The translations under genes were made by a program, and so were the position numbers. 64,000 bases of DNA. Source: Macrostomum lignano. Lineage: Eukaryota. The notes beneath the pieces were generated by a model. That model did no database searches. It was given only the letters and a program-made list of their open reading frames with translations, and was not told the origin of the DNA. Positions 1,885-56,159 of the stretch are shown one piece after another. The stretch's first letter is position 1. The number at the start of each line of letters is the position of its first letter. Location: NCBI GenBank assembly GCA_002269645.1, contig NIVC01001761.1, positions 1 to 64,000 of the forward strand, written 5' to 3'.

Positions 1885-5206
<3,322 letters not shown>

Positions 5207-9870: not shown

Positions 9871-10640
9871 CCTATCAAACGCCACTCTCAGCAATCACAA
9901 CGCCACTCTCAGCAAACACAACGCCACTCCCAGCAAACACAACGCCACTCCCAGCAAACACAACGCCACTCCCAGCAAACACAACGCCACTCCCAGCAAA
10001 CACAACGCCACTCTCAGCAAACACAACGCCACTCCCAGCAAACACAACGCCACTCCCAGCAAACACAACGCCACTCCCAGCAATTACAACGCCACTCTCA
10101 GCAAACACAACGCCACTCCCAGCAAACACAACGCCACTCCCAGCAATTACAACGCCACTCTTAGCAAACACAACGCCACTCCCAGCAAACACAACGCCAC
10201 TCCCAGCAATTACAACGCCACTCCCAGCAAACACAACGCCATTCACAGCAGACACAACGCCATTCACAGCAGACACAACGCCATTCACAGCAGACACAAC
10301 GCCACTCCCAGAAAACACAACGCCACTCACAGCAGACACAACGCCATTCACAGCAGACACAACGCCATTCACAGCAGACACAACGCCATTCACAGCAGAC
10401 ACAACGCCATTCACAGCAGACACAACGCCATTCACAGCAGACACAACGCCATTCACAGCAGACACAACGCCATTCACAGCAGACACAACGCCACTCCCAG
10501 AAAACACAACGCCACTCACAGCAGACACAACGCCATTCACAGCAGACACAACGCCATTCACAGCAGACACAACGCCATTCACAGCAGACACAACGCCACT
10601 CCCAGAAAACACAACGCCACTCACAGCAGACACAACGCCA
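9870..10640. repeat. 21-bp minisatellite CACAACGCCA(C/T)TC(C/A)CAGCA(A/G)A
   Basis: Abuts the previous array and shares the GCCACTC core and period. Confidence 0.95.
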
Positions 10641-16000: not shown

Positions 16001-18274
16001 TTGTGTCTCTGCTGCCTCTCATGTTCCTCCATTGTGTCTCTGGTGTCTCTCATGTTCCTTTATTGTGTCTCTGGTGTCTCCCCTGCTCCTTCTCCTTCGC
16101 TTCTTAAAAGCCTGTGTGACCAACAATGGAACCCTGCAACCAACCAACGCAGATAATTCTGAACTCGATGCACCGCTACCAACCCCGCTTTCACGTGGTG
16201 CACCTGCCGGACAAACAGCTGCCCGCTGGCCGCGGCGGCGGCGGACTGCAGCCGCCAGCCTCTGGCGACGACCTGAACGGGCACTCGGACAGCATCCGCA
16301 CCTTCGTGTTCCCGGAGACCAAGTTCTATGCAGTGACGGCCTATCAGAACCAGCGGGTGGGCAGCTAAATGATCATTGATTTCTTTTGCTTTGATCCCCA
16401 TCTCCTGATCTCAAATCTGAATGATCCCAACCCAGAATCTGAATAATCCCGATCCAGAATCTGAATGATCCCAACCCAGAATCTGAATAATCCCGATCCA
16501 GAATCTGAATGATCCCGATCCAGAATTTGAATGATCCCAACCCAGAATCTGAATAATCCCGATCCAGAATCTGAAAGATCCCGATCCAGAATCTGAATGA
16601 TCCCAACCCAGAATCTGAATAATCCCGATCCAGAATCTGAATGATCCCAACCCAGAATCTGAATAATCCCGATCCAGAATCTGAATGATCCCGATCCAGA
16701 ATTTGAATGATTTCAATCCAGATTCTGAAAGATCCCGACCCAGAATCTGAATGATCCCAACCCAGAATCTGAAAGATCCCGATCCAGAATCTGAATGATC
16801 CCGATCCAGAATCTGAAAGATCCCAACCCAGAATCTGAAAGATCCCGATCCAGAATCTGAAAGATCCCGATCCAGAATCTGAAAGATCCCAACCCAGAAT
16901 CTGAATGATCCCGATCCAGATTCTGAAAGATCCCGATCCAGATTCTGAAAGGTCTCGATATCAAATCTGAATGATCCGGATGCAGAATCTGAAGGATTGC
17001 AATTCTTAATTTTAACCATAACCATATTTGGTCTACGCTGAGCACTTTCTGAAGGGCAAAAAATTTATTAATTTTTTCAGATCACGCAACTCAAAATAGC
17101 CAGCAACCCGTTTGCCAAGGGCTTCAGGGACTGCGACACGGACGACTGGTGAGCTGGATCCCAGGGTCCAATTCTGAAGCCCCTGATTCACTTCTGGTAT
17201 CTCTGAATTCACTCAGTGATGGTAGTTGTTAAATTAATTTGTCAATCGCTGAAACCCTGAAGCCAAGCGTCAATCCCTGAGGCCATTAGACAATCCCCGA
17301 AGCCATTAGTCAATCCCTGAAGCCATCAGTCAATCACTGAGGCCATTAGTCAATCCCTGAAGCCACTCGTCTCCACCCTGCAGCACCGCCCAGCTGCTCA
17401 ACCAATTTAGTCCGCCTGCGAGGCTCAACGGCCGCGGCCCGCCTTCGACGCCGGGGTCCTTCCTGCCCGCTGTCAGCCCAGGTGACTTCACAACCGCAGC
17501 TGCTCGTCGAAGAGGCCTGAAGCCGGCGGCCGACTGCCTGTCGCTGGCAGGTGAGTTTAATGAACGTATGAACGTGTAAACTTGTGAACGTGTGAACGTG
17601 TGAACGTGTGAACGTGTGAACGTGTGAACGTGTGAACGTGTGAACGTGTGAACGTGTGAACGTGTGAACGTGTGAACGTGTGAACCCGTGAACGTGTGAA
17701 CGTGTGAACCCGTGAACGTGTGAACTTGTGAACATTTTAGGTAAAATTCTTTATAATTGAAACGTTTTTCCTAACATATCTATTAAAAGTAGGCAGTAAA
17801 GTAAGTTTCACAGAAAATCATTAACCAAATTTTGCAGGAAGTTTCTCCAGTCTGCAACAACAACAACAGCAGCAGCAGCAGCCGCCGCCGCCGCCAGCAT
17901 CGGCAGCGGAGATGGCCTACTACTGCAACGGGCTGTACTTGCAGCAGCCGTCAGACCGAATTCCTCATTCCTTCAGCTATGAATCTTCCTTGTCGTTTGA
18001 GCAGCAGCAGCAGCGGCAGCAGTGCAGTCAGGACGTGTCAGAGATGTACTACCCGGAGCAGCCTGAGTGCCAGCCGGCTCTGATGGACAGGTACTATCAG
18101 GCCCAGAAATCGGCTCTGCAGACTCGGGGCCCGAGCGTCTGTCACTACAGACCAGCTGCCCTGCTGTCGCAGCCGCAGCAGCTGCCGCTGTACTCCTGCG
18201 AATTCCAGGAGACGCCGGAGTCCACCGGCCCGTTTTATCATTCGACGAGCTGCGACACTGAGCTGCAGAAGTAG
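13043..18274 (+). CDS. TBX1: T-box transcription factor, TBX1 orthologue; exons 13043-13279, 14290-14426, 15725-15861, 16153-16356, 17081-17148, 17384-17550, 17838-18274; 5' exon/ATG not resolved
   Basis: [19 protein letters not shown]|RIFPTFQV...[18 protein letters not shown]|KSD...[15 protein letters not shown]...GH|[16 protein letters not shown]...[11 protein letters not shown]|[19 protein letters not shown]. These match Tbx1-subfamily diagnostic residues; all junctions are GT-AG and phase-compatible. Confidence 0.95.
13295..14195. repeat. 22-bp minisatellite CCTCTCTCCCTGAGTCTGTTAG in a TBX1 intron
   Basis: About 40 copies. Confidence 0.95.
14945..15620. repeat. 20-bp minisatellite TACAGACCCTTCATTCTCTC in a TBX1 intron
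   Basis: About 26 good copies to ~15460, then degenerate. Confidence 0.95.
15950..16090. repeat. ~31-bp repeat TGTGTCTCTGGTGTCTCTCATGTTCCTTCCT in a TBX1 intron
   Basis: About 4 imperfect copies. Confidence 0.75.
16410..16995. repeat. 22-bp minisatellite GATCCC(GAT/AAC)CCAGAATCTGAAT in a TBX1 intron
   Basis: Seen directly. Confidence 0.93.
17255..17365. repeat. 20-bp repeat GTCAATCCCTGAAGCCATTA in a TBX1 intron
   Basis: About 5 copies. Confidence 0.8.
17570..17735. repeat. 8-bp repeat (TGAACGTG)n in the last TBX1 intron
   Basis: Seen directly. Confidence 0.93.
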
Positions 18275-19488: not shown

Positions 19489-20604
19489 ATGGCTGCGGGA
19501 GCGAACCGGCTGCAGGCTCTGCTCAGCCAGGGCGTCAAGCCCATCATCGGCATGGTGCACGTGCGACCTACCCTGGCCTCGCATCGGTACAGGGACCCGC
19601 ATTCTAGGCTGGTTGAGGAGGCCGTGCAGGAGGCGGTGAGCTCTGCTGTTGCTGGGTGACCTGTAGATCAAGTTTTTTAGAGTGACGGGGTGACAGAGTG
19701 ACGGGGTGACAGAGTGACGGGGTGACAGAGTGACGGGGTGACAGAGTGACGGGGTGACAGAGTGACGGGGTGACAGAGTGACGGGGTGACAGAGTGACGG
19801 GGTGACAGAGTGACGGGGTGACAGAGTAACGGGGTGACAGAGTGAAGGGGTAAAATCATCGATTTTAAGGATCCTGAGAACAACAAAGTCGCTCCTGCCC
19901 CCACGCAGGTCACTCTGGTCAGTCGCGGAGTTCACTCGGTGCTCATCGAGAACATGCATGACGTACCCTACCAGCGTGCCGAGGAGGCCGGGCCCGAGCT
20001 AAGCGTTTCTATGACAACTGTTGCCATGGAGACCAGGCGACGCCTGCCCAACACGCCGCTTGGCGTGCAGATTCTCTCCGGCTGCAACCGGGCCGCGCTG
20101 GCTGTTGCCAAGGCAACCGATCTGGACTTTGTGCGCGCCGAGGGCTTCGTGTTCGCCCACATCGGCGACGAAGGCCTGACGCAGTCCTGCGCGGCCGACC
20201 TCCTGCGCTACCGGAGGCAGCTGTTCGCCTCATCAGTCTGGCTGCTGGCCGACGTCAAGAAGAAGCACTCGTCTCATGCCATCACAGCCGATACGGACCT
20301 GGCCGAGACCTGCCGGGCGGCCAAATTCTTCTTGGCCGACGCTCTGGTTGTCACCGGCCGCGCCACCGGCTGTCCGACGGTGCCAGCCGACGTGGCCGAA
20401 GCCGCAGCCGCCGGCCAGTCGCTGCCGGTGTTTGTCGGGAGCGGCGCCAGCGCCAGCGACTTGGCCGGCCTGTGGACAGCAGCTGACGGCTTCATCGTCG
20501 GCTCAGCGTTGAAAGCCGGCGGCCGATGGGAGAACGCGGTGGAGCCGAGGCGAGTGGACGAGCTGGTGCGGGAGCACTCGAGGCTGGCTGCTAGCGGCCT
20601 CTGA
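19489..20604 (+). CDS. BtpA/SgcQ-family TIM-barrel protein; exons 19489-19635, 19909-20604
   Basis: KPIIGMVHV, VLIENMHDVPY, LGVQILSGCNRAALAVA, FVRAEGFVFAHIGDEG, ADVKKKHSSHA, ADALVVTG..TG, PVFVGSG, ADGFIVGS..K..G.WEN.VEP.RV are family motifs; phase-0 GT-AG intron. Confidence 0.9.
19678..19850. repeat. 16-bp repeat AGAGTGACGGGGTGAC in the BtpA-like intron
   Basis: About 10 copies. Confidence 0.93.
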
Positions 20605-20624
20605 AACTTTTGTTCTTGCGGGAA

Positions 20625-21069
20625 GTGACAATTGACTGCCAGTGACAATTGACTGCCAGTGACAATTGACTGCCAGTGACAATTGACTGTCAGTGACAAT
20701 TGACTGTCAGTGACATTTGACTGCCAGTGACAATTGACTGCCAGTGACAATTGACTGCCAGTGACAATTGACTGTCAGTTTACAAACTTTGTATCTCATC
20801 AGTGACAATTGACTGTCAGTGACAATTGACTGTCAGTTTACAAACTTTGTATCTCATCAGTGACAATTGACTGTCAGTGACAATTGACTGTCAGTGACAA
20901 TTGACTGTCAGTGACAATTGACTGTCAGTTTACAAACTTTGTATCTCATCAGTGACAATTGACTGCCAGTGACAATTGACTGTCAGTTTACAAAATTTGT
21001 ATCTCATCAGTGACAATTGACTGCCAGTGACAATTGACTGTCAGTTTACAAAATTTGTATCTCATCAGT
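20625..21069 (+). repeat. 17-bp array GTGACAATTGACTG(C/T)CA with interspersed GTTTACAAACTTTGTATCTCATCA modules (left arm of an inverted pair)
   Basis: Starts 20 nt after the BtpA-like stop codon. Confidence 0.92.
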
Positions 21070-21764
21070 GCACATTTTAGTTAATTTTCGCCTTGAAAAT
21101 AAATTGTGAATGCACTGCAGAACGCGACTGCTACGTCACTGCTACAACCGTAACTTTTTAGTGGTCCTTGGCCAGCGTTTCTCTTACACACTCAAGCACT
21201 GGGCTTGTACCAGCGCAAGGCGAAACTTGTGAAATCGTCTCGTTTTGTCTTTACAAAAAAGCAGACATTGCTTCTATTTTTTAACGAAAAATAGCAAAAA
21301 AACTCGAATGTCGGCGCGGTCCATCAGCGAAACTCGAACCTGCCTCCAAATTTGGAAGGAAACAAAGGGATTAAAAAAAAACGGGCGACAAAAAATCAAG
21401 AAAGAAATTCGACAAGCAGCTTCCGGCCTCCTGGGACCGCCTGCGCGAACTGCAGAGCTGCACCGGCTGGGGACGGTGGCGGCGCCGCCTTGGCGCCCTC
21501 GAACTCGGTGTCGAATCGCAAAAGCACCGATGCGTAAGCCCAGCCCGCCTGGCTCAGCAGCCGCTTATCTATCCATTAGTAACTGGATGCGCCGACTGAA
21601 GTCGAAGTATTTGAAATCAACGTTTTTCTTAGAAAATTCAAGAACTTACCGACAGCTTTAGCTTGGGAGGAAGTTTAAAAATGCTTTTGAGTTCTGATTT
21701 TTTTATCAAGTTTGTTGCTGGAGCATCTAGCGGCGCTCTAGTGGTTTCTAACGAGCATTTATGC

Positions 21765-22085
21765 TGACAGTCAATTGTCACTGGCAGTCAATTGTCACTG
21801 GCAGTCAATTGTCACTGACAGTCAATTGTCACTGGCAGTCAAATGTCACTGGCAGTCAAATGTCACTGGCAGTCAAATGTCACTGGCAGTCAAATGTCAC
21901 TGGCAGTCAAATGTCACTGACAGTCAATTGTCACTGACAGTCAATTGTCACTGACAGTCAATTGTCACTGGCAGTCAATTGTCACTGACAGTCAATTGTC
22001 ACTGACAGTCAATTGTCACCGACAGTCAATTGTCACCGACAGTCAATTGTCACTGACAGTCAATTGTCACCGACTAGTCAATTGT
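21765..22085 (-). repeat. Same 17-bp array in reverse orientation, CTG(A/G)CAGTCAATTGTCA (right arm)
   Basis: Unit is the reverse complement of the 20625 array. Confidence 0.92.
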
Positions 22086-22409: not shown

Positions 22410-23240
22410 CATTTCATTTGAGACAGCGCCATTTTATTTGAGACTGTGCCATTTCATTTGAGGCAGCGCCATTTCATTTGAGGCAGCGCCATTTCATTTG
22501 AGACTGTGCCATTTCATTTGAGGCAGCGCCATTTCATTTGAGACTTTGCCATTTCATTTGAGACTGTGCCATTTCATTTGAGACTGTGCCATTTCATTTG
22601 AGACTGTGCCATTTCATTTGAGACTGTGCCATTTCATTTGAGACTGTGCCATTTCATTTGAGACTGTGCCATTTCATTTGAGACAGCGCAATTTCATTTG
22701 AGACAGCGCTATTTCATTTGAGACAGCGCAATTTCATTTGATACAGCGCAATTTCATTTGATACAGCGCAATTTCATTTGAGACAGCGCAATTTCATTTG
22801 AGACAGCGCAATTTCATTTGAGACAGCGCCATTTTATTTGAGACTGTGCCATTTTATTTGAGACTGTGCCATTTCATTTGAGGCAGCGCCATTTCATTTG
22901 AGGCAGCGCCATTTCATTTGAGGCAGCGCCATTTCATTTGAGGCAGCGCCATTTCATTTGAGACTTTGCCATTTCATTTGAGACTGTGCCATTTCATTTG
23001 AGACTGTGCCATTTCATTTGAGACTGTGCCATTTCATTTGAGACAGCGCAATTTCATTTGAGACAGCGCAATTTCATTTTAGACAGCGCAATTTCATTTT
23101 AGACAGCGCAATTTCATTTGAGACAGCGCAATTTCATTTGAGACAGCGCAATTTCATTTGAGACAGCGCAATTTCATTTGAGACAGGGCCATTTCATTTG
23201 AGACAGCGCAATTTCATTTGAGACAGCGCAATTTCATTTA
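22410..23240. repeat. 20-bp minisatellite CATTTCATTTGAGAC(AGC/TGT)GC
   Basis: About 40 copies arranged in variant blocks. Confidence 0.95.
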
Positions 23241-26700: not shown

Positions 26701-28371
26701 CTCTTCTCTCTGTCTCACTCCAAATCCTACAAAAAAGCCTAATTTGAATGCATTGATACATACATGTGTTATACAGCTGTGTTATTATTGTTGCTTTTTT
26801 ATCTTCAATCCATTTTTATAGGAACTGGAATTAAATTTGTCGCTCTAAGGATCTTAGAACTAATATGATGAACTATGAATTACTTTTTGAGCTAATTTTC
26901 CCTTGTTGTTTAAACACACTGATACTGATCTAAAATAAACCTACATTTACCAAGACTCAGACGATATTGCATGCTAGGTTCTTAATCTGATTAGCCTAGT
27001 TGAATAAATGCAACATTCGAATACAATTCATGAATTCACTAGCGGTAATAAATAATGACCACTTTCGGTAACAGCCAATTCAGGAACAAAGCAGATTTAC
27101 GACTGTTAAGACAATATTTTATGGTATTAGAGTTTAGCAGTTGGTTTAATAGTTAACATTTCAAATAGTTTTTTGGTATTTGTTAATTTTTAAATAAAAC
27201 TATGTCACAATTTGTTTAAAATCCCGCTTTGACTTTGTAAAAAATTTGAAAGCACTGGGTGCATCGAAACTATATATGATAAGAGATACAAGATAAGAGA
27301 TACAATATACCTCCTTGCAATTAAGTTCCTGCTTCTCTTCGTTGAAAAAATACCGGTGCAATTTCTCCCACTTTACGCGTTCATTCGTACCATAAATTCT
27401 CTAATCGCAAACACTTAGCCTATCTAAAACTTTGTTTTAAGCGCTCTTTTTTTTGGTCATTTCCTCCTATACTTGCTTTATGCCTAATAATTGCCTAATA
27501 ATTGCCAACAATCCTTATACATTTGATTTTTGTTATTATCTGATCGATACTCTATATGCATTTCGCTTTCGCTTTGAGATTAGTATTGAAATCCTGTCTC
27601 CCTGCCAGCATCTATGCGCTCCCCTAGTGACGCCAACTTATTTATATCACCTATGGCATCAATCGAATTGCTATACATCAAGTTCATACTATACTTGTTT
27701 TTTAATTCCTTACTAAAATAATACTTTTTGCCTCGTTAGTCGTTAAAGATCGTTTGAAGTTTCGTAGAAAAATTTAGGCGATTTTTCAAATACGCCTAAA
27801 TATTTTTAGGCAATAATTTTAGGCAAGATTATTGCAAAACTCTTGAAAATTTGCATAAATATTTCCAATGCTACTCTTGTCTTGAAACGTACTATTAAAA
27901 ACATTGAAATATATTGGCCAAACAGGCTTTTTGCCTGAGCCAAACTTACTACTACTACTAAAAATCGAATTTGAAGTTTTAAATATAGAATAAAGTAGAT
28001 GGTTAGTAATTAATTTCAAGCCACTAATCCAGAGATTCTAATTACTAATATACACAATAATTTAGCATTAAAAATTGTATCTGGTGCCTGTATGTGGCGC
28101 ACCGGGAAATTAAAATAAATTGGTTAAAACATATTTCAAACACACACACATGGGTATGGTATGGCTATGCTTTGGATAGTTTTTTGTCTTTCCTTCTCTA
28201 GACTAAAGTTTGTTTGCATTTTTGGAGCATAGGCCCTATCAATTAATACACTGCCATTCTCATTGGTTACTGAAGACGAAGTTGCTGTTACCCACCTGGA
28301 CTGTTATCCATATCCACTGCACTTGCCTAATCAGGTGCAAATAATAAGAAATCTGTCATATAAGCCTGATG

Positions 28372-29514
28372 GGCTATCCTTCAGTTTCGTTCGTTTAATT
28401 ATTTTCAGAGTCTTATATCATTGAGCCACTTCAGGCAGGGTAGTAGTGGCTCACCCAGTACAGGAAGTTGCCAAAGTGTTGCCCGTCTGGGTACAGCCGG
28501 CACCACAGGCAGGTATTCCTGCAGGTGGGACTTGAACAGCGCATTGCTTGGACTTGAACAGCGCATTGCTTGTCTCGTGCAAGCGTGCATGGCCCGCAGC
28601 TTTGCCTTGGAGTGTGCCCAGGTGCCCTCGATGGTATTGGTATGGACGGTTGGGTCCTGGGGGTCCACGAAGTGTAGGCGATGGTTCACGGTGGCATGGG
28701 CATAGCTAGGTACGGCAAGGCCATTGTAAGCCTGCCACCCATCAGTCAGCACCCGAGAACCAGGCATGATGTACTGCTGCATGATGGGCAGCAGCGTCTG
28801 GGCACGTCGATCAAGGACGATGACTATCATGCACTTGTTGCTGTTCCTCTTGACCATGCCAAGCACCCAGTGGCCCTCATGGTAGTTGCCAACGTGGTAC
28901 TTGCGATGGAAGAACTTAGACTTATCCATCTCAATTTCCACATTTGGGCCACCGAGCTGCATGGGGTGGTTGATCAGGACTTGGGCATAGACATCATGGC
29001 AGAAGTTGGCCCAATCAACGGCTGTGGCCCATGCCGTCAAGTCGCATTGTTGCATGGTGTCCTTCATCGGTGTCTTGAGGGCCCACCAGTACAGGAAGTC
29101 CACCAGTTGGGTTAGCTACAGGTGGCTACGCTCAAAGAACGAGCCCTTCTTGATAGACTCTTGAGCGTGACAGTCCTTGCAGGCCCAGGCCCAGCCATCA
29201 ACGTAATGATCACCTTGACAACGTTGAAGCCACATTCGGGGTGTCATAGGGCAGTTGTCGTTGTGGCATTGGCGCTCATTGGGCAGCAGCCGGTACTTCG
29301 CCAGCCAGCGCATCACAGATTGCATGTCAGCAGTCAGGATAGCGAGATCACGTATCTTCATGAACGGAAGATCGCATAAGTCAGTCATTGGCCTGATCTC
29401 AGCTGGTGGGACAATCGCCGTCAGAGTAGATAGGCAACCCGCCATGCTGAAAAAGGGGTAAAAAATGATATAAGACTCTGAAAATAATTAAACAAACGAA
29501 ACTGAAGGATAGCC
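28372..29514 (-). mobile_element. Merlin (IS1595/IS1016-like) DNA transposon, 1143 bp, both ends intact
   Basis: 51-bp TIRs starting GGCTATCCTTCAG (28372-28422 / 29464-29514, one mismatch); perfect 8-bp TSD GCCTGATG (28364-28371, 29515-29522). Confidence 0.95.
28405..29445 (-). pseudogene. Merlin DDE transposase pseudogene
   Basis: N-terminal Cys motifs (C..C...W.C..C), GGPNVEIEMDKSKF (consensus EIDES), WVLGMV, TLLPI, TDGWQAYNGL, TVNH, HTNTIEGTW. In-frame TAG at 29116-29118; tandem duplication/frameshift near 28530-28575. Confidence 0.92.
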
Positions 29515-30080
29515 GCCTGATGTTATGTTGTAACCATCCAACTATGCTAATGCCATTAAAAAATCCATTGGAAAATATTTTTTTCTATTTTTAGAGTCAC
29601 AAAAAACTTCTGCATAGCATAGACTTGGCCTAACTGGTCATATAGCTAGGTTTTTTGTGGTATTGTATTGTGGCATTGCCAAGGGTATATATAGTATAAT
29701 ACTATAAGTCCCACTTATAGAGGTATACCACATTTTCATATAAATTATTAAAGGTACATGTAGCATGTCGGCCCAACAAAATGACAAAATGTGACAGTCT
29801 AGGCCTAAAGCCAGAGGTAAAGGTATAATATTTTATTTAATAAATTTATTAAGTAGACCTGCCTAATTGGCTAAAGGCTTAGCAAATCTAGGGCCTAGTT
29901 ATAAAAAGGTTATCTTCTAGAATTAAAAACTTTTGGCTAATACTTGATTCACATACATGTATTATTGCCTTTTTTGGACTGAATAGGCATACTAGCCTAA
30001 TATTTATTAGGGCCTTAGGCCTTAGGGTAAGAATTATAAAAACTTCTTTTTAGGTATTTTTAAAACTTTGTATGCCTATG

Positions 30081-30865
30081 CCATAGTCCAGATCATGCTA
30101 GGTGCATACTCAAACAAAAATTGAATAATTACAAATGCATGCCACAAAATTGAGTGCATGCCTATTCTCAAAACTACATTAGTGCTATGACAATAAATTA
30201 CCTTTTTCAAATTGCATAAGGGACCCATTTTGGCAAATAGCTTGGTTGCTTTTTCAATAATACTATTTATAGTAGAAAAGCAATACATGCAAAGATTTGT
30301 TTAAATGCATTATTAGGCCTACAAGCTTAAAAAACCCCAAAAACGTGACATTTATGCTCAGAAAATGAACTTTTGTTATCTTTTTTCTACTTAACAATAA
30401 CTCTTCCTTGTGATTATAAAAAGTGCACACCAAGTGTGCATACACTATTTTCTCAGAAATGATGCATGCCAACAGTGGCAGATCCAAAGTTTCATTTTGG
30501 GGGGAGGTGGTTCAAGTTTTGGGTGCCAACACAAGTATAAAGGGTGCCAATTTTTAAGCTAGGGGGCACAAAAATGCACGTAAAAGGCAAAAAATCAAGC
30601 TTAGGTGCGCTAAAAAGGCATTGAGGGCAAAAAATCAAGCTTAGAGGCACTATAAAGGTGTTTAGGGCAAAAAATCATATTTAGGGATGCAAATTTAGGT
30701 TTTTTGGGGGGCGCAATATGTTTGGTTAAGCTATTTTGGAGGGGGGGGGGGCAGCCCGCCCCCCTAAATTTGCCCCTGCATGCCAACTATGCATGTCTAT
30801 TTTTGGTATGCAAGGCCAATGCCTATCAAAATTTTTGAGTGTATACTACATGATCCAGAGTGTGG
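30081..30865. mobile_element. Old TIR-bearing non-autonomous element, superfamily unresolved
   Basis: Imperfect inverted ends TCCAGATCATGCTAGGTGCATACTCAAA vs reverse complement TCTGGATCATG-TAGTATACACTCAAA; no clear TSD. Confidence 0.5.
30473..30778. mobile_element. hAT-type MITE (306 bp) nested in the previous element
   Basis: Ends CAGTGGCAGATCC...AAATTTGCCCCTG; perfect 8-bp TSD CATGCCAA (30465-30472, 30779-30786). Confidence 0.85.
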
Positions 30866-31227
30866 TTTATATGAAAAAACCTTTAAAAAGTCACTTATAA
30901 AATTGAATTACCAAAAATGTCATAGTTCAAGATAAAAAACTTGCACAAAAATTATGATTTTATTCCAAAATTAGAGTTCTTTTTTATCTATAGATATAGA
31001 TACAAAAAGTTACAAATATATTTTTTGGCTTCCTAGTTATAGTTTGATGATTAAAAAAGAACCATACATATATTTTATGCTCTACTATATGTTCAGTTGT
31101 TTTAGAATTCATAAGCTGCTATATGAAAAATATAGAACTAGAAGTTTGATACAGATTGCTTATAATAATATATAAAATGCATAAATGTTTATTTGCATCT
31201 TAATACATGTATTAACCTAGCTATGTG

Positions 31228-31494
31228 CAGTGGCATAGCCAGGGAGAGGGGCTGGGGGAGACTGCAGCCCCTCCCCCAATCGCCTACAGGGGGGGGGTGG
31301 GGTTGGGTGTGGCAGGTACCAAAAACCATAAGGCAATTAAGTGCCTGCAATGCTAAAATGAGTGCCTGTAATACCAAAATGAGTGCCTACAATGCCAAAA
31401 TAAGTGCTTGCAGCACCAAAAGTGGCAATGGCATAAGGCATGGCCAGCCAGGCCAACCTGACCCCCCCAATTGAAATTCCTAGCTTTGCCACTG
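31228..31494. mobile_element. hAT-type MITE (267 bp), nested
   Basis: TIRs CAGTGGCATAGCCAGGGA vs CAGTGGCAAAGCTAGGAA (15/18); degenerate 8-bp TSD GCTATGTG / GCTGTGTA. Confidence 0.8.
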
Positions 31495-31712
31495 GCTGTG
31501 TATACTACTTTCAACCCTGTCACCTATGCATCTATGGTGTTGCCTATTAAACTGATTCCTTGGGACTTATAAGCCTCTGCCCCTAGGTCTATTATTGGCT
31601 TCCTATATGTAGCTCTTGCTAATTAGCCATCATGTATATTTTCATATATAAACCTATACCCTGACTTTTAATTAATGCATAAACAACTATATATATACTT
31701 GTATGCCACAAT

Positions 31713-32468
31713 TAGGGGTCACAAAATCCCGGATTCTGTCAATCCCAGGATCCTAGGATTAGACAAATACCAACAAACATCAATGCCAATAGCTAACAAA
31801 TACCAAAAGACATCAATGCCAATAGCTGATAAACACCAACAGATATCAATGTCAATAGCTGACAAACACTAGCAGTTGATATTTTTCCAGTACCATCCTT
31901 GTCGTAACATTGTTATAATGTTATAACAACACTGCAAATTACTTTTTTTATCACGTGACTAATGTGAGAACATTATTGTGCAAAGCAATATAAATGTATA
32001 TATATGTATTACATACTATGTAGTAGCACTAGCAGTATGCACATTGCAAAACAAATGCACATGACTTGTGGACATGGTCGTGGAGTCATTGGCCCATGGC
32101 ATGAGTCACATTCACAAGGAGTCACAAGGACTCACAGTCACAACACAAGTCACAACCTACTACCACCTGGGCATTCACGTTGTCACTTGTCAGTCTGGAG
32201 TCTGGACTCACAACTATGAGTTTAAACTTTAAAATCAAATCTCAATGTTAAATGATTTAAACAAGACTCAACTCAAACAACATTAAAGACCTTACAAAGT
32301 GGGCAACAGAGAATGGACATGTATGCGTGTTTGTTCCATATTTGAACTAACTGCCATTTTATGATAAAATACTTGCTATTATATTAGACATTATAAAAAC
32401 ATAGCATTAACATTCTGGGATTGAATCCCGACCCTGTAAATCCCAGGATCCTGGGATTGTGACCCCTA
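31713..32468. mobile_element. Non-autonomous hAT-type element (756 bp), nested
   Basis: TIR TAGGGGTCACAA, subterminal ATCCC/GGGAT motifs; TSD GCCACAAT / GCCTCAAT (7/8). Confidence 0.85.
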
Positions 32469-33253
32469 GCCTCAATTCGCTGGAATTTATTTAATTTTTT
32501 ACAAGCTATTGACACTTGGATACTCTGAAAGATTATCTCCTAATGTAACACAAAACTAAAGATCTCTAAGATGCTTGCACAATGCAATAACAGATGTAGC
32601 AACTTATTTGCAAGTAAATGGAAATAGTAATATAAAAAGCTATATAAGCTTTTTGTGGTTATGGATACAGATATAGATACGGCTACGGGAATTTTTGTAG
32701 ATACAGATATAGGAAATTTTTGGATATAATAGATAGAACTCTATCCAAAATTGTCATTTGCAAAGATTTTATCTTAACAAATAAACCATTTCCTTTGAAC
32801 TAATAATAATAAACAAACTCTATAGATATATATCTATATAATATCTATTATATATAATATTAGTTAAGATAAAAAGGGGTCAATAAGAACTATAATATTG
32901 TATATTTGTAGGGACTTTACTGATGGTCTTATGATTTGCTAATATATATTATCGAAATAAAAGTAGTTTCTAATAAAATAGAAGTCTTTTTATGAACAAA
33001 AAACCTTGCTACATTTGCAATGCAGTTAAATATAAAATAAAAAGTAAATATAAACAAGAAAGAAAAGGCATCGATTAATTAGTTAGCCACTACAATGCCC
33101 AGAGCTCAGCATTCTGGCACCATACTTGCATTAGTGGACACTTAAATTGATCATTGCACTGTTGTCATGCATAATAGAGATGGTCTATCAAATCTAAAAG
33201 TATATACTTAGCAGTCTATCCACCTTTACTTGTCTACCCTATGCCGCAATCGC

Positions 33254-36200
33254 ATGGCAACCAAGGGTGGAGACAGCCAGATGTACAAGTTTTCCATCCT
33301 GGCGCCAGAAGTTTACTGCCAGGCAATAAAATCTGCAGAGCCTGTGAAGCAAGATGATGCTGCTTACAGATTTGGTCTGTTTCTCAAGCAGTGGGCTGAA
33401 GAAGTCTTTGGCATGAGCTGCTTTGTACCATCAAGTTCTGGTGCAGCTTTTATTGAGAATTTCAACACTTTTGAGAGCGACTTTCTTGCAAAGTCAGAAT
33501 ATTGCGTCATCATTATCAGTGAGGTTGCTGCCAAACCGTTGAATAGGTTCCTGGCCAGACTGCTCGTGTTTGTCACCATGCGTGCAATGTGGCGCAGTCG
33601 CTTCATATTTATTGCGCTGGGCGAGTTCGAAGGCTTAAAGAAGTTGCACTTGGACGTTTCCGTGCACGATCTAATTATCTTTAAATCTCGCACCGAGGAG
33701 GGATGGATGGTGGAGACTGAGTGCTGGAAGGCTCTCTACTTCATACTCAACATTTCCTGGGCATCCTTAGGCGACTCGAATGGGACAGCAGAGAATTCTA
33801 ATGGCGCTCAGTCAAGCGAGATTACTGAATCAACCGACCAGCTTGACAAAGCCTTCAAGCTGATTCTGATGACTTCGAGGAGTTACTCGAAAGAGTCTAA
33901 TGATGACGGTCGGGGCGAAGCATTTGCTCAGTTTTTGCAGCAAAAATCTGAAAGCGAGTTTAGTATGTCCTGCAAGATACCAAGCTCATCTGGTAGCGCT
34001 TTTATCACGGATTTTAACAAGTTTGAGAATGAGTTTCTGCGCGTAAGTGAGTATTGCTTGATTGTCGTGTCAGAGGAGTCCGTGCGCCGCTTCCGCATCT
34101 TCTTGCCGCGCCTTCTGGTGTTTTTGACCAGGCGAAGTGTGTGGAGCAACCGCTTCATAATTGCATGCGTTGGTAATGTTGATCTACGCGAGTCCGAGGT
34201 TGACTTTCTGACCCATCCTCCTGTATATTTTACATCCACTGAGGCTGAGTCTTGGTCAACGGAGGTTCAATCCTGGCAAATTTTGTATCGCATCCTGCGC
34301 ATAACGTGGGCGCCGACTGATGCCGAGAGTCAGCTTGCAAAAATCTCTTTCGATGCCGATCAATTCTACCACACTGTGGTTTTTACGTCGATTTTTTATT
34401 CGACATCTGCCGAAGAGCAACCGGACGATTGCACCGGTTGGCAGTTTGCCTCTTATTTTTCCACGAAAATGAGCAACGAGTACAAGCTCATGGTTTATGT
34501 ACTGACTGCTAGAGATGCCGTACAGGTTGAAACTCTGGATGAACTAGAGATAAAGTACTTGCAAAAGTGCGGAAATCTGGTTTTTATCGTGACTGAAGAG
34601 TCAGTAGTGCAGTTCACTCAGTTTCTAAACCGTCTGCAGCAGTTCCTATCTGGACGCGTTCAGTGGCGCAATCGACTCACGCTGGTTTGCGTAGGCAACG
34701 TGCAGTTGGATGAGAGCCATTTAGCTTTGTTTGGCTCTTCTGTAATTACCATCTACTCATCTGAGCGCTCCAGCTGGACAAGTATCGAGTCGAGCACTTG
34801 GACCACAATTGTGACTTTAGTGCGTCAGAATGAGATCATTACTCAGGAGGAACTCGTTGAGCAGGCCACTTCACTGCCTGTCAACGCATCAAGTGTAAGC
34901 AACATAGACGGTGCAACGAAGTCTTTGGACGTTAAAAGCACTAGCCAAACTGTTGTCACGGGAGGAAACTCGAGGAATGCAACAGAAACATCATCGTCAT
35001 CGACTCTCACAACCACAACAACTCGCATCACCAACACAACCCACACGACCTCTTCAATAGACGTTACGGATTCTTCTACGCAGGAAAAGCAAGAGCAGGA
35101 ACGTCAGAAGCTGGAACAAGAACGGCAGGATCATGAGCGTCTGAAGGAGCAGGAGCGTCAGAAGCGGGAGCAGGAGCGTCAGGAACAGGAGCGTCAGACG
35201 CGGGAGCAGGAGCGTCAGGAACAGGAGCGTCAGAAGCGGGAGCAGGAGCGTCAGGAACAAGAGCGTCAGAAGCGGGAGCAGGAGCGTCAGGAACAAGAGC
35301 GTCAGAAGCAGGAGCGGGAGCGTCAGGAACAAGAGCGTCAGAAGCGGGAGCAGGAGCGTCAAGAACAAGATCGTCAGAAGCGGGAGCAGGAGCGTCAGGA
35401 ACAAGAGCGTCAGAAGCGGGAGCAGGAGCGTCAGGAACAAGAGCGTCAGAAGCGGGAGCAGGAGCGTCAGGAACAAGAGCGTCAGAAGCGGGAGCGGGAG
35501 CGTCAGAAGCGGGAGCAGGAGCGTCACGAGCAAGAGCGTCAGAAGCGGGAGCAGGAGCGTCAGAAACAAGAGCGTCAGAAGCGGGAGCGGGAGCGTCAGG
35601 AACAAGAGCGTCGAAAGAAGGAACAGGAGCGTCTTGAGCAGCAACAGCAACAAAGCCAGACACATTCGCAAACTAGCTGGACGACTACTACTGTAACTAA
35701 AACTACAACAAAGACAACTGAAAATCAGGAAAAGCTGAACGTATCTAACGTTCCTAATGTTGATGATGTTTCTCGCCATTCCGGTGAAGACAGCAGCAGT
35801 GAATCGGATGATAGTAATCGCAAAGGCGAAATTGGTGACTCCCGACGCACCAGTGGTCGCTCATCCTTGGTTGTTCGAGTTATGCGAGTAATTCACACTC
35901 GCATTGTGCGCATCACGATCTTGATTCATTCCACCACCGTAGTCACGATCACGCGCATTGTGACTTTGATTGGCGCTCCGGTCAGAATGGTTCGCTACAC
36001 TGCGCTCTACGCCAGCCAGCAGAGTTGGCTGCTCCGGATCTTGACTATTATTCGTCGGGTTTTGCGCCTGACAAGCGAGACAATTGGCTACGTTTCTGGC
36101 AGTCGCATTGCCATCACGAGCGGTGGCGACCGCGATGATGACGTCCTGATTGGCGACTCCGATCGGCGCAGCCGATATCTCCTGCTTCCAGCCTGGCTGG

Positions 36201-36409
36201 TGCGCTTTGTATTCTACGCGTCCGGCCGCTTCATCGCCTGTCGGACCGAGGCCGAGGCCAAGGCTAAGCTGACCCAGCAGGTCAAAGGTGGCGGCGGCGC
36301 TGGGGTCCCAGATGCTACTGGCGTTTCAGCAATACAGACTGTCACCGATTGGCGCGATGAGAACTGCGCAATGTGTCATCAACTGGTTGTTGACGGTCTG
36401 GCCGCGTGA
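33254..36409 (+). CDS. Intronless 1051-aa protein: three tandem TIR/SEFIR-like domains, Thr/Ser linker, E/Q/R/K coiled-coil repeat, basic hydrophobic C-terminal region
   Basis: Long non-repetitive ORF. Three alignable ~150-aa units (~33284-33760, ~33850-34310, ~34365-34830) with alternating beta/alpha pattern, e.g. SEYCVIIISE / SEYCLIVVSE / CGNLVFIVTE. 36-bp coding repeat ERQKREQERQEQ at ~35085-35650. The fold is inferred from pattern only. Confidence 0.8.
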   Translation: MATKGGDSQMYKFSILAPEVYCQAIKSAEPVKQDDAAYRFGLFLKQWAEEVFGMSCFVPSSSGAAFIENFNTFESDFLAKSEYCVIIISEVAAKPLNRFLARLLVFVTMRAMWRSRFIFIALGEFEGLKKLHLDVSVHDLIIFKSRTEEGWMVETECWKALYFILNISWASLGDSNGTAENSNGAQSSEITESTDQLDKAFKLILMTSRSYSKESNDDGRGEAFAQFLQQKSESEFSMSCKIPSSSGSAFITDFNKFENEFLRVSEYCLIVVSEESVRRFRIFLPRLLVFLTRRSVWSNRFIIACVGNVDLRESEVDFLTHPPVYFTSTEAESWSTEVQSWQILYRILRITWAPTDAESQLAKISFDADQFYHTVVFTSIFYSTSAEEQPDDCTGWQFASYFSTKMSNEYKLMVYVLTARDAVQVETLDELEIKYLQKCGNLVFIVTEESVVQFTQFLNRLQQFLSGRVQWRNRLTLVCVGNVQLDESHLALFGSSVITIYSSERSSWTSIESSTWTTIVTLVRQNEIITQEELVEQATSLPVNASSVSNIDGATKSLDVKSTSQTVVTGGNSRNATETSSSSTLTTTTTRITNTTHTTSSIDVTDSSTQEKQEQERQKLEQERQDHERLKEQERQKREQERQEQERQTREQERQEQERQKREQERQEQERQKREQERQEQERQKQERERQEQERQKREQERQEQDRQKREQERQEQERQKREQERQEQERQKREQERQEQERQKRERERQKREQERHEQERQKREQERQKQERQKRERERQEQERRKKEQERLEQQQQQSQTHSQTSWTTTTVTKTTTKTTENQEKLNVSNVPNVDDVSRHSGEDSSSESDDSNRKGEIGDSRRTSGRSSLVVRVMRVIHTRIVRITILIHSTTVVTITRIVTLIGAPVRMVRYTALYASQQSWLLRILTIIRRVLRLTSETIGYVSGSRIAITSGGDRDDDVLIGDSDRRSRYLLLPAWLVRFVFYASGRFIACRTEAEAKAKLTQQVKGGGGAGVPDATGVSAIQTVTDWRDENCAMCHQLVVDGLAA

Positions 36410-40694: not shown

Positions 40695-40965
40695 TCCCCT
40701 GTCATTCACTAAACCCTCAGATATGTTTCCCTGTCATTCACTGAACCCTCAGCAGTTTCCCTGTCATTCACTGAACCCTCAGCAGTTTCCCTGTCATTCA
40801 CTGAACCCTCAGTAGTTCCCCTGTCATTCACTGAACCCTCAGATATGTTTCCCTGTCATTCACTGAACCCTCAGCAGTTTCCCTGTCATTCACTGAACCC
40901 TCAGTAGTTCCCCTGTCATTCACTGAACCCTCAGCAGTTTCCCCTGTCATTCACTAAACCCTCAG
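40695..40965. repeat. 30-bp array CCCTGTCATTCACTGAACCCTCAGCAGTTT; last copy supplies the AG before the CK2 beta ATG
   Basis: 9 copies ending in CTCAG at 40720...40965. Confidence 0.9.
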
Positions 40966-40979
40966 CTCGCCGGCCGCCA

Positions 40980-42232
40980 ATGCGAATGGTTGACAGCGAC
41001 AGTCCCGCCAGCGCCGCGGCAAACTGGATTGCCGAGTTCTGCGACCGGCCAGGCAACGAGTTCTTCTGCAAAGTAGACGAGGACTACATCAGGGACCGCT
41101 TCAACCTCACTGGACTGGGCACGGCGGTGCCGAACTACCATCGGGCCATGAAGCTCCTGCTTGATGGCCCGGAACAGCTGGACTTGGCCAGCGACGACCC
41201 GCAGCTGGAGACTCTGCAGCGGAGTGCCGAGCTGCTGTACGGCTTGATTCACGTGCGCTTCATCATGTCCGTCCAGGGCATGCCGCAGATGGTGGCCAAG
41301 TGGATGCTGGGCCACTTTGGAGTCTGCCGCCGTGTCTTCTGCGAAAAACAGCGGGTTTTACCTGTTGGTGAGCGATTTCCAGGTATTCCTGTGCCTGTTG
41401 GTGAGCGATTTCCAGGTGTTCAGACGTGTTCCTGTGCCTGTTGGTGAGCGATTTCCAGGTGCTCCTGTGCCTGTTGGTGAGCGATTTCCAGGTGTTCCTG
41501 TGCCTGTTGGTGAGCGATTTCCAGGTGTTCCTGTGCCTGTTGGTGAACAGTTTCAGGGGGAGCGGTGGTTTCCAGCTGTTCCTGTGGGTTCAGGGGGAGC
41601 GGTGGTTTCCAGGTGTTCCTGTGGGTTCAGGGGGAGCGGTGGTTTCCAGCTGTTTCTGTGGGTTCCAGGGGGAGCGGTGGTTTCCAGCTGTTCCTGTGGG
41701 TTCCAGGGGGGAGCGGTGGTTTCCAGGTGTTTCTGTGGGTTCCAGGGGGGAGCGGTGGTTTCCAGGTGTTTCTGTGGGTTCCAGGGGGGAGCGGTTGTTT
41801 TTCCACTTTTTGCCAAGTCAAGGCTGCAGGGAAAAGGCCTATTCAATAATGCTCATCGATCAACCCGCAGGTCTGTCGGACATCCCAGGTGAGGCCACGG
41901 TAAAGGTGTACTGCCCCCGCTGCATGGAGGTGTACGTCCCCAACTCGTCCCGCCACTTGCACGTCGACGGCGCCTACTTTGGCACAGGGTTTCCCCATTT
42001 GCTATTTTTATCCCATCCGGAATGCCGGCCCAAGCCGCCAGCCAATCAGTTTGCGCCCAGCCTGTACGGCTTCAAGATTCACCCGCTGGCCTATCAGCTG
42101 CAGCAGGCGGCGGCCGCCGGCGCCCAGCGGCAGCACCGCGACTCCGGCATCGGCACCAGCGGCAACCCCGGGTCGACAGCCGTGACCGCTGGAGCCGCCG
42201 CTGCCGCTGCCTGTCCCGCATTCAAGCCGTGA
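40980..42232 (+). CDS. CSNK2B: Casein kinase 2 regulatory (beta) subunit, divergent; exons 40980-41367, 41871-42232
   Basis: WIAEFC...[46 protein letters not shown]...LPVG|[36 protein letters not shown]; four Zn-finger Cys present. Confidence 0.93.
41361..41800. repeat. Intronic arrays: 33-bp unit CCTGTTGGTGAGCGATTTCCAGGTGTTCCTGTG (contains the donor), grading into ~37-bp unit GGGGAGCGGTGGTTTCCAGGTGTTCCTGTGGGTTCA
   Basis: 6 copies of the first unit, then ~7 of the derived unit. Confidence 0.9.
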
Positions 42233-56060: not shown

Positions 56061-56159
56061 TTGGAAGAGCGAGCACTGGCGTACGCGTGTCAGTGGAGGA
56101 CCGCAGCCAGGGTCAGTACGCGAACCTGGGTCTGGAAAGGGGCTCGAAGGGACCGAGCC

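What the first reader, a model, noticed from the sequence alone, without database searches (positions are those of the whole stretch)
28000..33200. CpG-depleted transposon nest: signature of local methylation-driven decay
By eye I count 6 CG in 29521-30960 (1440 bp) versus 21 in the similarly AT-rich 27301-28020 (720 bp), about 7-fold lower density. TIR mismatches point the same way. The single mismatch in the 51-bp Merlin TIRs is CG vs TG. The 30081 element has TCCAGATC vs TCTGGATC (ancestral TCCG). MITEs here read GGCATAGC and GGCAGATC, whereas the similar MITE at 1959 keeps GGCGTAGC. This suggests a sharply bounded, germline-methylated TE domain in an otherwise CpG-rich genome, notable if this is a flatworm. 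The domain also has none of the minisatellites that fill the rest of the window.
Basis: partly seen in the sequence, partly recalled or inferred. Interest (0 to 1): 0.8.

Follow-up and report, generated by a model that had tools for sequence, protein, structure and literature searches.

The report
CpG-depleted transposon block in Macrostomum
A 5-kb stretch of old, nested DNA-transposon debris between two genes of the flatworm Macrostomum has lost about 80% of its CpG sites while everything around it keeps them, which is the usual footprint of long-term germline DNA methylation aimed at transposons; it is a real and clean signal but of a known kind.

Summary
With the Merlin insertion removed, 27967-33244 (4,127 bp, 34% GC) has 22 CpG against 121.6 expected, o/e 0.18. 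AT-rich non-repeat DNA elsewhere in the window has o/e 0.77 (Poisson P about 3e-20). All six of the 68 non-repeat chunks with o/e below 0.4 lie in this block. A change-point fit places the borders at 27795-28185 and 33431-33561, with o/e 0.17 inside and 1.01 outside. Only CpG is strongly depleted; GpC is not.

The block contains a defective Merlin element, two hAT-like MITEs, a TA-flanked MITE, a weakly bounded fourth element and unclassified AT-rich debris. The organism is Macrostomum lignano or a sibling species. Reviews report that this flatworm retains DNMT1 and DNMT3 and has low 5mC.

The most likely cause is transposon-targeted germline methylation followed by deamination decay. Two points remain unproven. 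No methylation data exist for this locus. I also could not separate local decay from CpG poverty inherited from the source copies, and the MITE end-repeat argument favours inheritance. The missing minisatellites are not specific to the block. This is a new member of a known kind, of moderate interest.

The parts
27967..33244 (.). CpG-depleted block, interrupted by Merlin. The maximum-likelihood borders are 27795-28185 on the left and 33431-33561 on the right.
   Evidence: With Merlin excised there are 22 CpG against 121.6 expected, o/e 0.18. Change-point fit: 2dLL 123, o/e 0.17 inside and 1.01 outside. CpG positions are listed.
27967..28363 (.). Unclassified AT-rich sequence left of Merlin. 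It was continuous with 29523-30080 before Merlin inserted.
   Evidence: 3 CpG against 11.3 expected, o/e 0.27.
28364..28371 (.). Left copy of the Merlin target-site duplication, GCCTGATG.
   Evidence: Identical 8-mers flank the element.
28372..29514 (-). Defective Merlin-superfamily DNA transposon. It has 51-bp end repeats matching at 50 of 51 positions. The transposase reading frame (29445 down to about 28405) is broken by a stop at 29116-29118 and by a frameshift linked to the 22-bp tandem duplication at 28528-28572.
   Evidence: Pfam PF12762 DDE_Tnp_IS1595, E = 1.9e-17. End repeats. Translation with the stop. C-terminal frame analysis against homolog P0001. CpG o/e 0.58 and TG+CA o/e 1.46.
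29515..29522 (.). Right copy of the Merlin target-site duplication, GCCTGATG.
29523..30080 (.). Unclassified AT-rich sequence rich in TAGGCC/GGCCTA motifs.
   Evidence: 1 CpG against 13.8 expected, o/e 0.07.
30081..30865 (.). Putative element A. Its end repeats of about 40 nt are degraded to about 75% identity and no target-site duplication is evident. MITE B is nested inside it. The arms differ by CA against TG at one dinucleotide.
   Evidence: Alignment of the arms. CpG: 1 against 9.5 expected in the left arm and 0 against 2.8 in the right arm.
30473..30778 (.). MITE B, hAT-like. Its ends read CAGTGGCAGATCC and CAGGGGCAAATTT, and it has a perfect 8-bp target-site duplication CATGCCAA (30465-30472 and 30779-30786). 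It carries an internal 40-bp unit repeated three times.
   Evidence: 4 CpG against 14.1 expected, o/e 0.28.
31228..31494 (.). MITE C, hAT-like. Its ends read CAGTGGCATAGCCAGG and CAGTGGCAAAGCTAGG. Its 8-bp target-site duplication has decayed to 6 of 8 matches (GCTATGTG and GCTGTGTA).
   Evidence: GC 54% but 1 CpG against 19.6 expected, o/e 0.05. TG+CA o/e 1.52.
31715..32466 (.). Element D, a non-coding element flanked by TA on both sides. Its ends read GGGGTCACAA, with repeated ATCCCAGGATCC motifs near both ends. It resembles a Tc1/mariner-type MITE.
   Evidence: 7 CpG against 25.6 expected, o/e 0.27.
32467..33244 (.). Unclassified, very AT-rich sequence (28% GC) directly upstream of the orphan gene.
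   Evidence: 5 CpG against 15.7 expected, o/e 0.32.
26766..27966 (.). Left flank, used as a control. It is equally AT-rich (32% GC) but CpG-normal.
   Evidence: 28 CpG against 29.8 expected, o/e 0.94.
33254..36409 (+). Right flank: a long orphan reading frame (1,051 codons from the first ATG) that is CpG-normal after its first ~220 bp.
   Evidence: Reading frame. Symmetrised CpG 0.99. No homolog found.
1959..2112 (.). Comparison element outside the block: a hAT-like MITE with a perfect target-site duplication TTCCCTGT, inserted in a minisatellite. It keeps CG in both end repeats.
   Evidence: 6 CpG against 12.2 expected, o/e 0.49.

Best explanation
The block is an intergenic pile-up of old, mostly non-autonomous DNA transposons in the genome of Macrostomum lignano or a very close relative. 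It was CpG-methylated in the germline over a long period. Spontaneous deamination of 5-methylcytosine turned most CpGs into TpG or CpA, and later into other dinucleotides. This brought CpG down to about 0.18 of expectation, a level typical of vertebrate bulk DNA. The flanking genes, the AT-rich flank and the minisatellites stayed unmethylated and kept their CpGs.

Shown here:
- the depletion, its specificity to CpG and its borders;
- the transposon content of the block;
- the identity of the organism.

Taken from the literature: this flatworm keeps DNMT1 and DNMT3 and has low global 5mC.

Inferred:
- that methylation caused the loss;
- that it was aimed at this transposon block, for example by a small-RNA or heterochromatin pathway;
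- that much of the decay happened in place, with part of the deficit already present in the source copies when they inserted.
For: 1. CpG is the only strongly depleted dinucleotide (symmetrised rho 0.17-0.18), while GpC is 1.5-1.6.
2. Every one of the 11 sub-parts outside Merlin, whether bounded by end repeats or unclassified, has o/e of 0.32 or less.
3. TG+CA is raised: 1.24 in the block against 1.16 in AT-rich controls, and 1.43 in the TIR-bounded elements (symmetrised CA/TG rho). The excess of about 36 dinucleotides covers about half of the CpG deficit of about 72.
4. CpG o/e falls with apparent element age. Merlin (end repeats 98%, perfect target-site duplication) is 0.58. MITE B (perfect duplication) is 0.28. 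Element D (21-36-nt terminal matches 86-95% identical) is 0.27. MITE C (duplication 6 of 8) is 0.05. Element A (repeats about 75%) is about 0.1.
5. The only Merlin end-repeat mismatch is CG against TG. The arms of element A carry CA against TG at one dinucleotide, which are the two products of an ancestral CG.
6. Equally AT-rich non-repeat DNA outside the block has o/e 0.77. The adjoining 1.2 kb has 0.94.
7. The borders are sharp.
8. The organism is Macrostomum. M. lignano is reported to keep DNMT1 and DNMT3 with low 5mC (PMC11292947, PMC9246332, PMC10658182).
Against: - No 5mC measurement for the locus or the genome could be reached. The primary paper (Wasik 2015) is not held.
- The unclassified parts show no TG/CA excess (1.08 against 1.14 in controls).
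- All four end-repeat arms of MITEs B and C carry CA at the supposed ancestral CG. This fits a source copy that already lacked the CpG better than four independent local events.
- MITE B has an intact target-site duplication yet o/e 0.28, so at least part of its deficit preceded insertion.
- The block differs from host AT-rich DNA in other dinucleotides too. TA is 1.01 against 0.78, CC/GG is 1.41 against 0.92 and GA/TC is 0.65 against 0.94. Excluding CpG, delta* is 0.193 against 0.051 +/- 0.013. Its composition is therefore partly intrinsic to the sequence class.
- The end-repeat evidence rests on two events.
Confidence: 0.6

Rival explanations
1. Inherited CpG poverty with no local domain. 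The elements and debris arrived already CpG-poor, because their families are methylated wherever they sit or because their source copies have that composition. The block is then just where such elements piled up, and its sharp borders are the edges of inserted DNA.
For: - All four end-repeat arms of MITEs B and C share CA.
- MITE B has a perfect target-site duplication but o/e 0.28.
- The young Merlin copy is already at 0.58 with TG+CA at 1.46.
- The block has its own dinucleotide signature beyond CpG, shared by the bounded elements and the unclassified parts: CC/GG is about 1.4 and GA/TC is 0.6-0.7.
Against: - The depletion is uniform across at least five unrelated elements and all the sequence between them.
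- o/e falls with the apparent age of the insertion.
- A related hAT-like MITE outside the block keeps CG in both end repeats and has o/e 0.49.
- No end repeats mark the outer borders as the ends of one inserted element.
- This rival still needs methylation somewhere in the family history.
Confidence: 0.25
2. A cause unrelated to 5mC. The block is neutrally evolving or foreign DNA, for example horizontally acquired transposons, whose low CpG reflects another mutational or compositional bias. The CpG-normal sequences used as controls would then be functionally constrained.
For: - The dinucleotide signature stays distinct when CpG is excluded.
- TpA is near 1.0 in the block against 0.78 in controls, as expected for unconstrained DNA.
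- GA/TC is unusually low at 0.65.
Against: - An o/e of 0.18 with GpC at 1.5 is the specific signature of 5mC deamination. Genomes without CpG methylation show CpG near expectation (established knowledge).
- CA/TG is raised, not depleted, so a RIP-like process is excluded.
- The host is reported to keep the DNMT1/DNMT3 machinery.
Confidence: 0.1
3. Chance, or an artefact of low GC content.
For: None beyond the low GC content of the block.
Against: The Poisson P is 1e-28 to 3e-20. No shuffle out of 2,000 came near the observed count. GC-matched controls have o/e 0.77-0.94. The change-point fit gives 2dLL 123.
Confidence: 0.01

Closest known systems
Mosaic invertebrate methylomes in which transposons as well as, or instead of, gene bodies carry 5mC, with CpG depletion of the methylated compartment (reviewed in PMC11292947 and PMC9246332)
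   Same: There are two compartments, CpG o/e about 0.2 and about 1.0, with a sharp border. The loss is specific to CpG and TpG/CpA is raised. The host is reported to keep DNMT1 and DNMT3.
   Different: In most invertebrates the depleted compartment is the bodies of housekeeping genes. Here the exons in the window (CK2-beta 0.92, BtpA 1.04, U-box 1.02) are not depleted and a transposon block is. Methylation was not measured here.
Vertebrate bulk-genome CpG depletion with unmethylated CpG islands
   Same: The depth of depletion (o/e about 0.2) and the abrupt change to CpG-normal DNA at a gene start are alike.
   Different: The proportions are reversed. Here the depleted DNA is a 5-kb island in a CpG-normal background.
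Merlin superfamily of DNA transposons (eukaryotic relatives of the bacterial IS1016/IS1595 group; from my own knowledge, Feschotte 2004)
   Same: It has an IS1595-type DDE transposase domain, an 8-bp target-site duplication and long end repeats starting with GG.
   Different: This copy is dead, with a premature stop and a C-terminal frameshift. Its nearest database relatives are only 53% identical.
Fungal repeat-induced point mutation (RIP)
   Same: Both are repeat-directed C-to-T decay that produces AT-rich repeat islands with sharp borders.
   Different: RIP removes CpA/TpG and creates TpA. Here CpA/TpG is in excess (1.24) and only CpG is lost. It is not RIP.

Membership tests
Merlin superfamily DNA transposon | DDE transposase of the IS1595/ISXO2 type | tested here: met
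   Pfam PF12762, E = 1.9e-17, 64 bits against a cut-off of 27. Homologs carrying PF12762 were found at up to 53% identity over the full length.
Merlin superfamily DNA transposon | 8-9 bp target-site duplication | tested here: met
   GCCTGATG lies on both sides.
Merlin superfamily DNA transposon | Terminal inverted repeats | tested here: met
   51 nt, 98% complementary.
Merlin superfamily DNA transposon | Intact transposase, meaning an autonomous copy | tested here: not met
   There is an in-frame TAG at 29116-29118 where the homolog has Glu. The 22-bp duplication at 28528-28572 comes with a frame change before the conserved C-terminal FxNxLYWxxHYY motif. The copy is a member of the family but defective.
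hAT-type MITE (elements B, C and the copy at 1959) | 8-bp target-site duplication | tested here: met
   B has CATGCCAA on both sides. The 1959 copy has TTCCCTGT on both sides. C has GCTATGTG and GCTGTGTA, 6 of 8.
hAT-type MITE (elements B, C and the copy at 1959) | Short end repeats starting with CAG and no coding capacity | tested here: met
   The ends read CAG(T/G)GGC. The elements are 154-306 bp long.
hAT-type MITE (elements B, C and the copy at 1959) | Ends matching those of an autonomous hAT element in the same genome | not testable with these tools
   No Macrostomum genome sequence beyond the window could be reached.
Tc1/mariner-type MITE (element D) | TA target-site duplication and terminal inverted repeats | tested here: met
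   TA flanks both GGGGTCACAA ends. The inverted repeat matches are 86-95% identical.
Genomic compartment depleted of CpG by 5mC deamination | CpG o/e far below the flanks after correction for base composition | tested here: met
   0.18 against 0.77-1.01.
Genomic compartment depleted of CpG by 5mC deamination | Depletion specific to CpG, with GpC unaffected | tested here: met
   Rho for CG is 0.17-0.18 and for GC 1.5-1.6.
Genomic compartment depleted of CpG by 5mC deamination | Matching excess of TpG/CpA | tested here: inconclusive
   The excess is 1.24 against 1.16 in controls and covers about half the deficit. It is strong in the bounded elements (1.43) and absent in the unclassified parts (1.08).
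Genomic compartment depleted of CpG by 5mC deamination | Excess of CpG transitions against family consensus or between duplicated parts | tested here: inconclusive
   Only two informative events support it: the Merlin CG/TG mismatch and the CA/TG pair in element A. The MITE end repeats point to loss before insertion. No family consensus was obtainable.
Genomic compartment depleted of CpG by 5mC deamination | The host encodes DNMT1 and DNMT3 | not tested
   Reported for M. lignano in PMC11292947 and PMC9246332. It cannot be checked from the window.
Genomic compartment depleted of CpG by 5mC deamination | 5mC present on the remaining CpGs in germline DNA | not testable with these tools
   This needs bisulfite, EM-seq or nanopore data.
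RIP-like repeat mutation | Depletion of CpA/TpG with a gain of TpA | tested here: not met
   CA/TG is 1.24, which is an excess.

The most novel reading that the evidence does not exclude
Macrostomum, one of the few flatworms that kept DNMT1 and DNMT3, may use 5mC almost only on transposon islands and not on gene bodies. That would be a fungus-like or plant-heterochromatin-like pattern, unusual for an invertebrate animal. This block would be its sequence footprint. The methylation might be guided by the piRNA pathway. Housekeeping exons in the same window, such as CK2-beta, show no CpG loss.
Probability: 0.3. Interest if true: 0.6.

Novelty: new member of a known kind. Interest (0 to 1): 0.4.

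Why it matters
Parasitic flatworms and planarians are reported to have lost DNMT1 and DNMT3, while Macrostomum kept them. [quoted passage not shown] I found no later methylome paper for Macrostomum in the held library.

A sequence-only footprint suggesting that transposon blocks, not gene bodies, carried germline 5mC gives a concrete prediction. It can be tested cheaply with existing long-read or bisulfite data. The result bears on what DNA methylation did in the flatworm ancestor before it was lost in other lineages. As a single locus, it is a lead rather than a result.

Tried and rejected
**Looking for other copies of the elements, to build family consensus sequences**
- Self-BLAST of the block against the window found only its own end repeats.
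- Exact-protein look-ups found nothing on record for the orphan gene, the U-box reading frame, two Merlin reading-frame pieces and the M. lignano BtpA protein. One look-up failed on the server.
- A metagenome scan with the Merlin end repeat, made degenerate at its CpGs, gave 0 hits.
- The Merlin protein search gave only distant relatives of 53% identity or less, from unnamed read sets.

**Literature**
- The primary Macrostomum genome paper that reports 5mC is not held.

**Other scans**
- The Rfam scan of the window was empty.
- The bacterial promoter and terminator scan does not apply to a eukaryote.
- Pfam scans of flanking reading frames at 24-27 kb and 55-58 kb were uninformative, apart from a weak reverse-transcriptase hit.

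**Hypotheses rejected**
- The whole block as one large element: no end repeats at its outer borders, only a 14-nt AT-rich match that is probably chance.
- RIP.
- An effect of low GC content.
- Gene-body methylation of an intron: the adjoining exon is CpG-normal.

**Minisatellite control**
- Several arrays show frequent CG-to-CA or CG-to-TG units, but each is a single variant spread through the array.
- Counted per site, CpG positions are no more often polymorphic by transition than other C/G positions (6 of 34 against 74 of 304).
- This gives no evidence for CpG hypermutability in the arrays, though the test has low power.


Full report

Yes. The two counts are exact: 6 CpG in 29521-30960 (GC 34%, o/e 0.14) and 21 in 27301-28020 (GC 32%, o/e 1.17). 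One-kilobase bins give o/e 0.11-0.32 for 30001-33000. The bins at 24-28 kb give 1.02-1.16 and those at 34-38 kb give 0.92-1.07.

Tandem repeats cover 41% of the window, so I masked them and cut the rest into 68 chunks of about 250-850 bp. Six chunks have o/e below 0.4, and all six lie between 28017 and 33026. The others range from 0.48 to 1.32.

The CpG positions show that the poor stretch starts after 27966 and ends at about 33245-33478. A CpG-richer insert, the Merlin element, interrupts it. With Merlin and one copy of its target-site duplication excised, the block is 4,127 bp at 34% GC. It holds 22 CpG against 121.6 expected, o/e 0.18.
- The Poisson P is 1e-28 against o/e 1.
- It is 3e-20 against o/e 0.80, close to the 0.77 of fourteen AT-rich non-repeat control segments.
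- Two thousand shuffles gave 121.6 +/- 9.2 CpG, with a minimum of 90.

A two-border likelihood fit on 24.4-38.9 kb gives 2dLL = 123, with o/e 0.17 inside and 1.01 outside. The left border falls at 27795-28185 and the right border at 33431-33561. The depletion is real, survives composition correction and is sharply bounded.

**2. Is it specific to CpG?**

Symmetrised dinucleotide ratios for the block are CG 0.17-0.18, GC 1.5-1.6 and CA/TG 1.24. CpG is the only dinucleotide that collapses.

The TG+CA excess over the control level is about 36 dinucleotides, against a CpG deficit of about 72. It is strong in the elements bounded by end repeats (1.43). It is absent in the unclassified parts (1.08), where TpA is high instead (1.11). 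This fits old decay whose products have mutated further, but it does not prove it. RIP is excluded because CpA/TpG is in excess.

**3. What is in the block?**

- *Merlin, 28372-29514.* It has 51-bp end repeats (50 of 51 matching) and an 8-bp target-site duplication GCCTGATG. Its minus-strand reading frame hits Pfam DDE_Tnp_IS1595 at E = 1.9e-17. The copy is dead. It has a TAG at 29116-29118 where a homolog has Glu. It also has a 22-bp tandem duplication (28528-28572) with a frame change ahead of the conserved C-terminal motif. Its CpG o/e is 0.58.
- *MITE B, 30473-30778.* It has hAT-like CAGTGGC and CAGGGGC ends and a perfect 8-bp duplication CATGCCAA. Its o/e is 0.28. It is nested in putative element A.
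- *Putative element A, 30081-30865.* Its end repeats are about 75% identical and no target-site duplication is evident. Its o/e is about 0.1.
- *MITE C, 31228-31494.* It is hAT-like, with a duplication matching at 6 of 8 positions. It is 54% GC yet has 1 CpG against 19.6 expected.
- *Element D, 31715-32466.* It has GGGGTCACAA ends flanked by TA and an o/e of 0.27.
- *The remaining 2.3 kb.* This is unclassified AT-rich sequence with o/e 0.18. It shares the odd signature of the bounded elements (CC/GG about 1.4, GA/TC 0.6-0.7), so it is probably older debris of the same kind.

No end repeats mark the outer borders, so the block is not one large element. 'Transposon nest' is therefore a fair description, although only about half of the block is formally delimited.

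**4. Which organism?**

The reading frame at 19846-20601 is a BtpA-family gene. Its best hit is a Macrostomum lignano protein. Past the probable splice site, 228 of 231 residues are identical. The window therefore comes from M. lignano or a sibling species.

Reviews state that M. lignano, unlike planarians and parasitic flatworms, retains DNMT1 and DNMT3 and has low-level 5mC (PMC11292947, PMC9246332, PMC10658182). The 2022 review says the genomic pattern is unknown in free-living flatworms. Five further searches found no later Macrostomum methylome study in the held library. The primary paper is not held.

**5. Mechanism**

An o/e of about 0.2 limited to CpG, in a host reported to have the maintenance and de novo methyltransferases, is best explained by germline 5mC and deamination.

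Within the block, o/e falls with apparent insertion age.

| Element | Age indicator | CpG o/e |
|---|---|---|
| Merlin | end repeats 98%, intact duplication | 0.58 |
| MITE B | intact duplication | 0.28 |
| Element D | diverged end repeats (terminal matches 86-95%) | 0.27 |
| Element A | end repeats about 75% | about 0.1 |
| MITE C | duplication 6 of 8 | 0.05 |

The one Merlin end-repeat mismatch is CG against TG. Given 8 CpG bases among 102, that is about nine times more likely if CpG mutates about ten times faster than other sites; this is my own rough calculation. The arms of element A carry CA against TG at one dinucleotide.

Elsewhere in the window there is no sign of such decay.
- Exons of CK2-beta (0.92), BtpA (1.04), the U-box gene (1.02) and the orphan gene (0.99) are CpG-normal.
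- A degenerate reverse-transcriptase-like stretch at 55.5-58.4 kb has 0.87.
- The unique core of a foldback-like element has 1.23.
- CpG positions in minisatellite units are no more often polymorphic by transition than other C/G positions, 6 of 34 against 74 of 304.

So the inferred methylation is neither genome-wide nor on gene bodies. It is also not on every transposon.

**6. What stays open**

First, methylation itself is only inferred.

Second, local decay cannot be separated from inherited CpG poverty.
- All four end-repeat arms of MITEs B and C read CA where the 1959 copy reads CG. Four independent local events would give a mixture of TG and CA.
- MITE B has an untouched target-site duplication but o/e 0.28.
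- The young Merlin copy is already at 0.58.
- The block's dinucleotide signature differs from host AT-rich DNA even without CpG. Its delta* is 0.193, against 0.051 +/- 0.013 (maximum 0.086) for 500 random 4-kb control sets.

I therefore think both components contribute. The family-only version is the main rival at 0.25.

Third, the missing minisatellites are not specific to the block. The array-free gap is about 23.2-35.1 kb.

**7. Comparison and verdict**

The block behaves like the methylated compartment of a mosaic methylome, or like vertebrate bulk DNA next to a CpG island, but with the proportions reversed and transposons rather than gene bodies depleted. This is a known kind of feature in a lineage where its pattern has not been described. 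It rests on a single locus.

I rate it a new member of a known kind, with interest 0.4. The most novel reading still open is transposon-only methylation without gene-body methylation in a flatworm. I give it a probability of about 0.3 and an interest of 0.6 if true.

Noticed in passing
window 20624-22085: Two arrays of the same 17-bp minisatellite, (AGTGACAATTGACTGTC)n and its reverse complement, lie in inverted orientation. The match reaches 156 nt at 96% complementarity. They flank a 693-bp unique, CpG-rich core (21071-21763, o/e 1.23). This looks like a Foldback-type transposon whose end repeats are made of tandem repeats.
   Followed up: partly
window 33254-36409 (+): A 1,051-codon reading frame has three tandem copies of a domain of about 170 aa, followed by a long (QEQERQKRE)n stretch encoded by a 36-bp tandem repeat. 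It has no Pfam hit and no homolog among 5.8 billion proteins. The first ~220 bp of the frame still lie in the CpG-poor zone, so the true start codon may be further downstream.
   Followed up: partly
window 1959-2112: A hAT-like MITE with a perfect 8-bp target-site duplication (TTCCCTGT) is inserted into the 3-kb (CCCTGTCTCTC)n array. The duplication is itself part of the repeat unit, so the array predates the insertion.
   Followed up: partly
whole window: Minisatellites with periods of 8-44 bp cover 41% of the window, in more than 30 different arrays. The longest are an 11-bp unit repeated 282 times (2115-5091) and a 12-bp unit repeated 329 times (59692-63635). Several arrays show higher-order alternation of two unit variants that differ at a CpG (8567-10231, 16414-16997, 22410-23239).
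   Followed up: partly
window 27967-33244: Besides CpG, the block has unusually low GA/TC (0.65 against 0.94 in controls), high CC/GG (1.41 against 0.92) and many TAGGCC/GGCCTA motifs. The CpG-normal flank next to it instead carries TTAGGCG/CGCCTAA motifs. This is unexplained.
   Followed up: partly
window 40908-41444, 19846-20601, 50070-51032, 593-1153: Host gene pieces were identified by Pfam: casein kinase II beta, a BtpA-family protein, a U-box protein lying in a 73% GC stretch, and an alpha/beta hydrolase. All have CpG o/e of 0.8-1.04, so there is no footprint of gene-body methylation.
   Followed up: partly
window 55500-58450 (+): A run of plus-strand reading frames changes frame at least four times. 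One piece gives a weak reverse-transcriptase hit (RVT_1, E = 4.6e-6, below the Pfam cut-off). It is probably a decayed retroelement, yet its CpG ratio is 0.87.
   Followed up: partly
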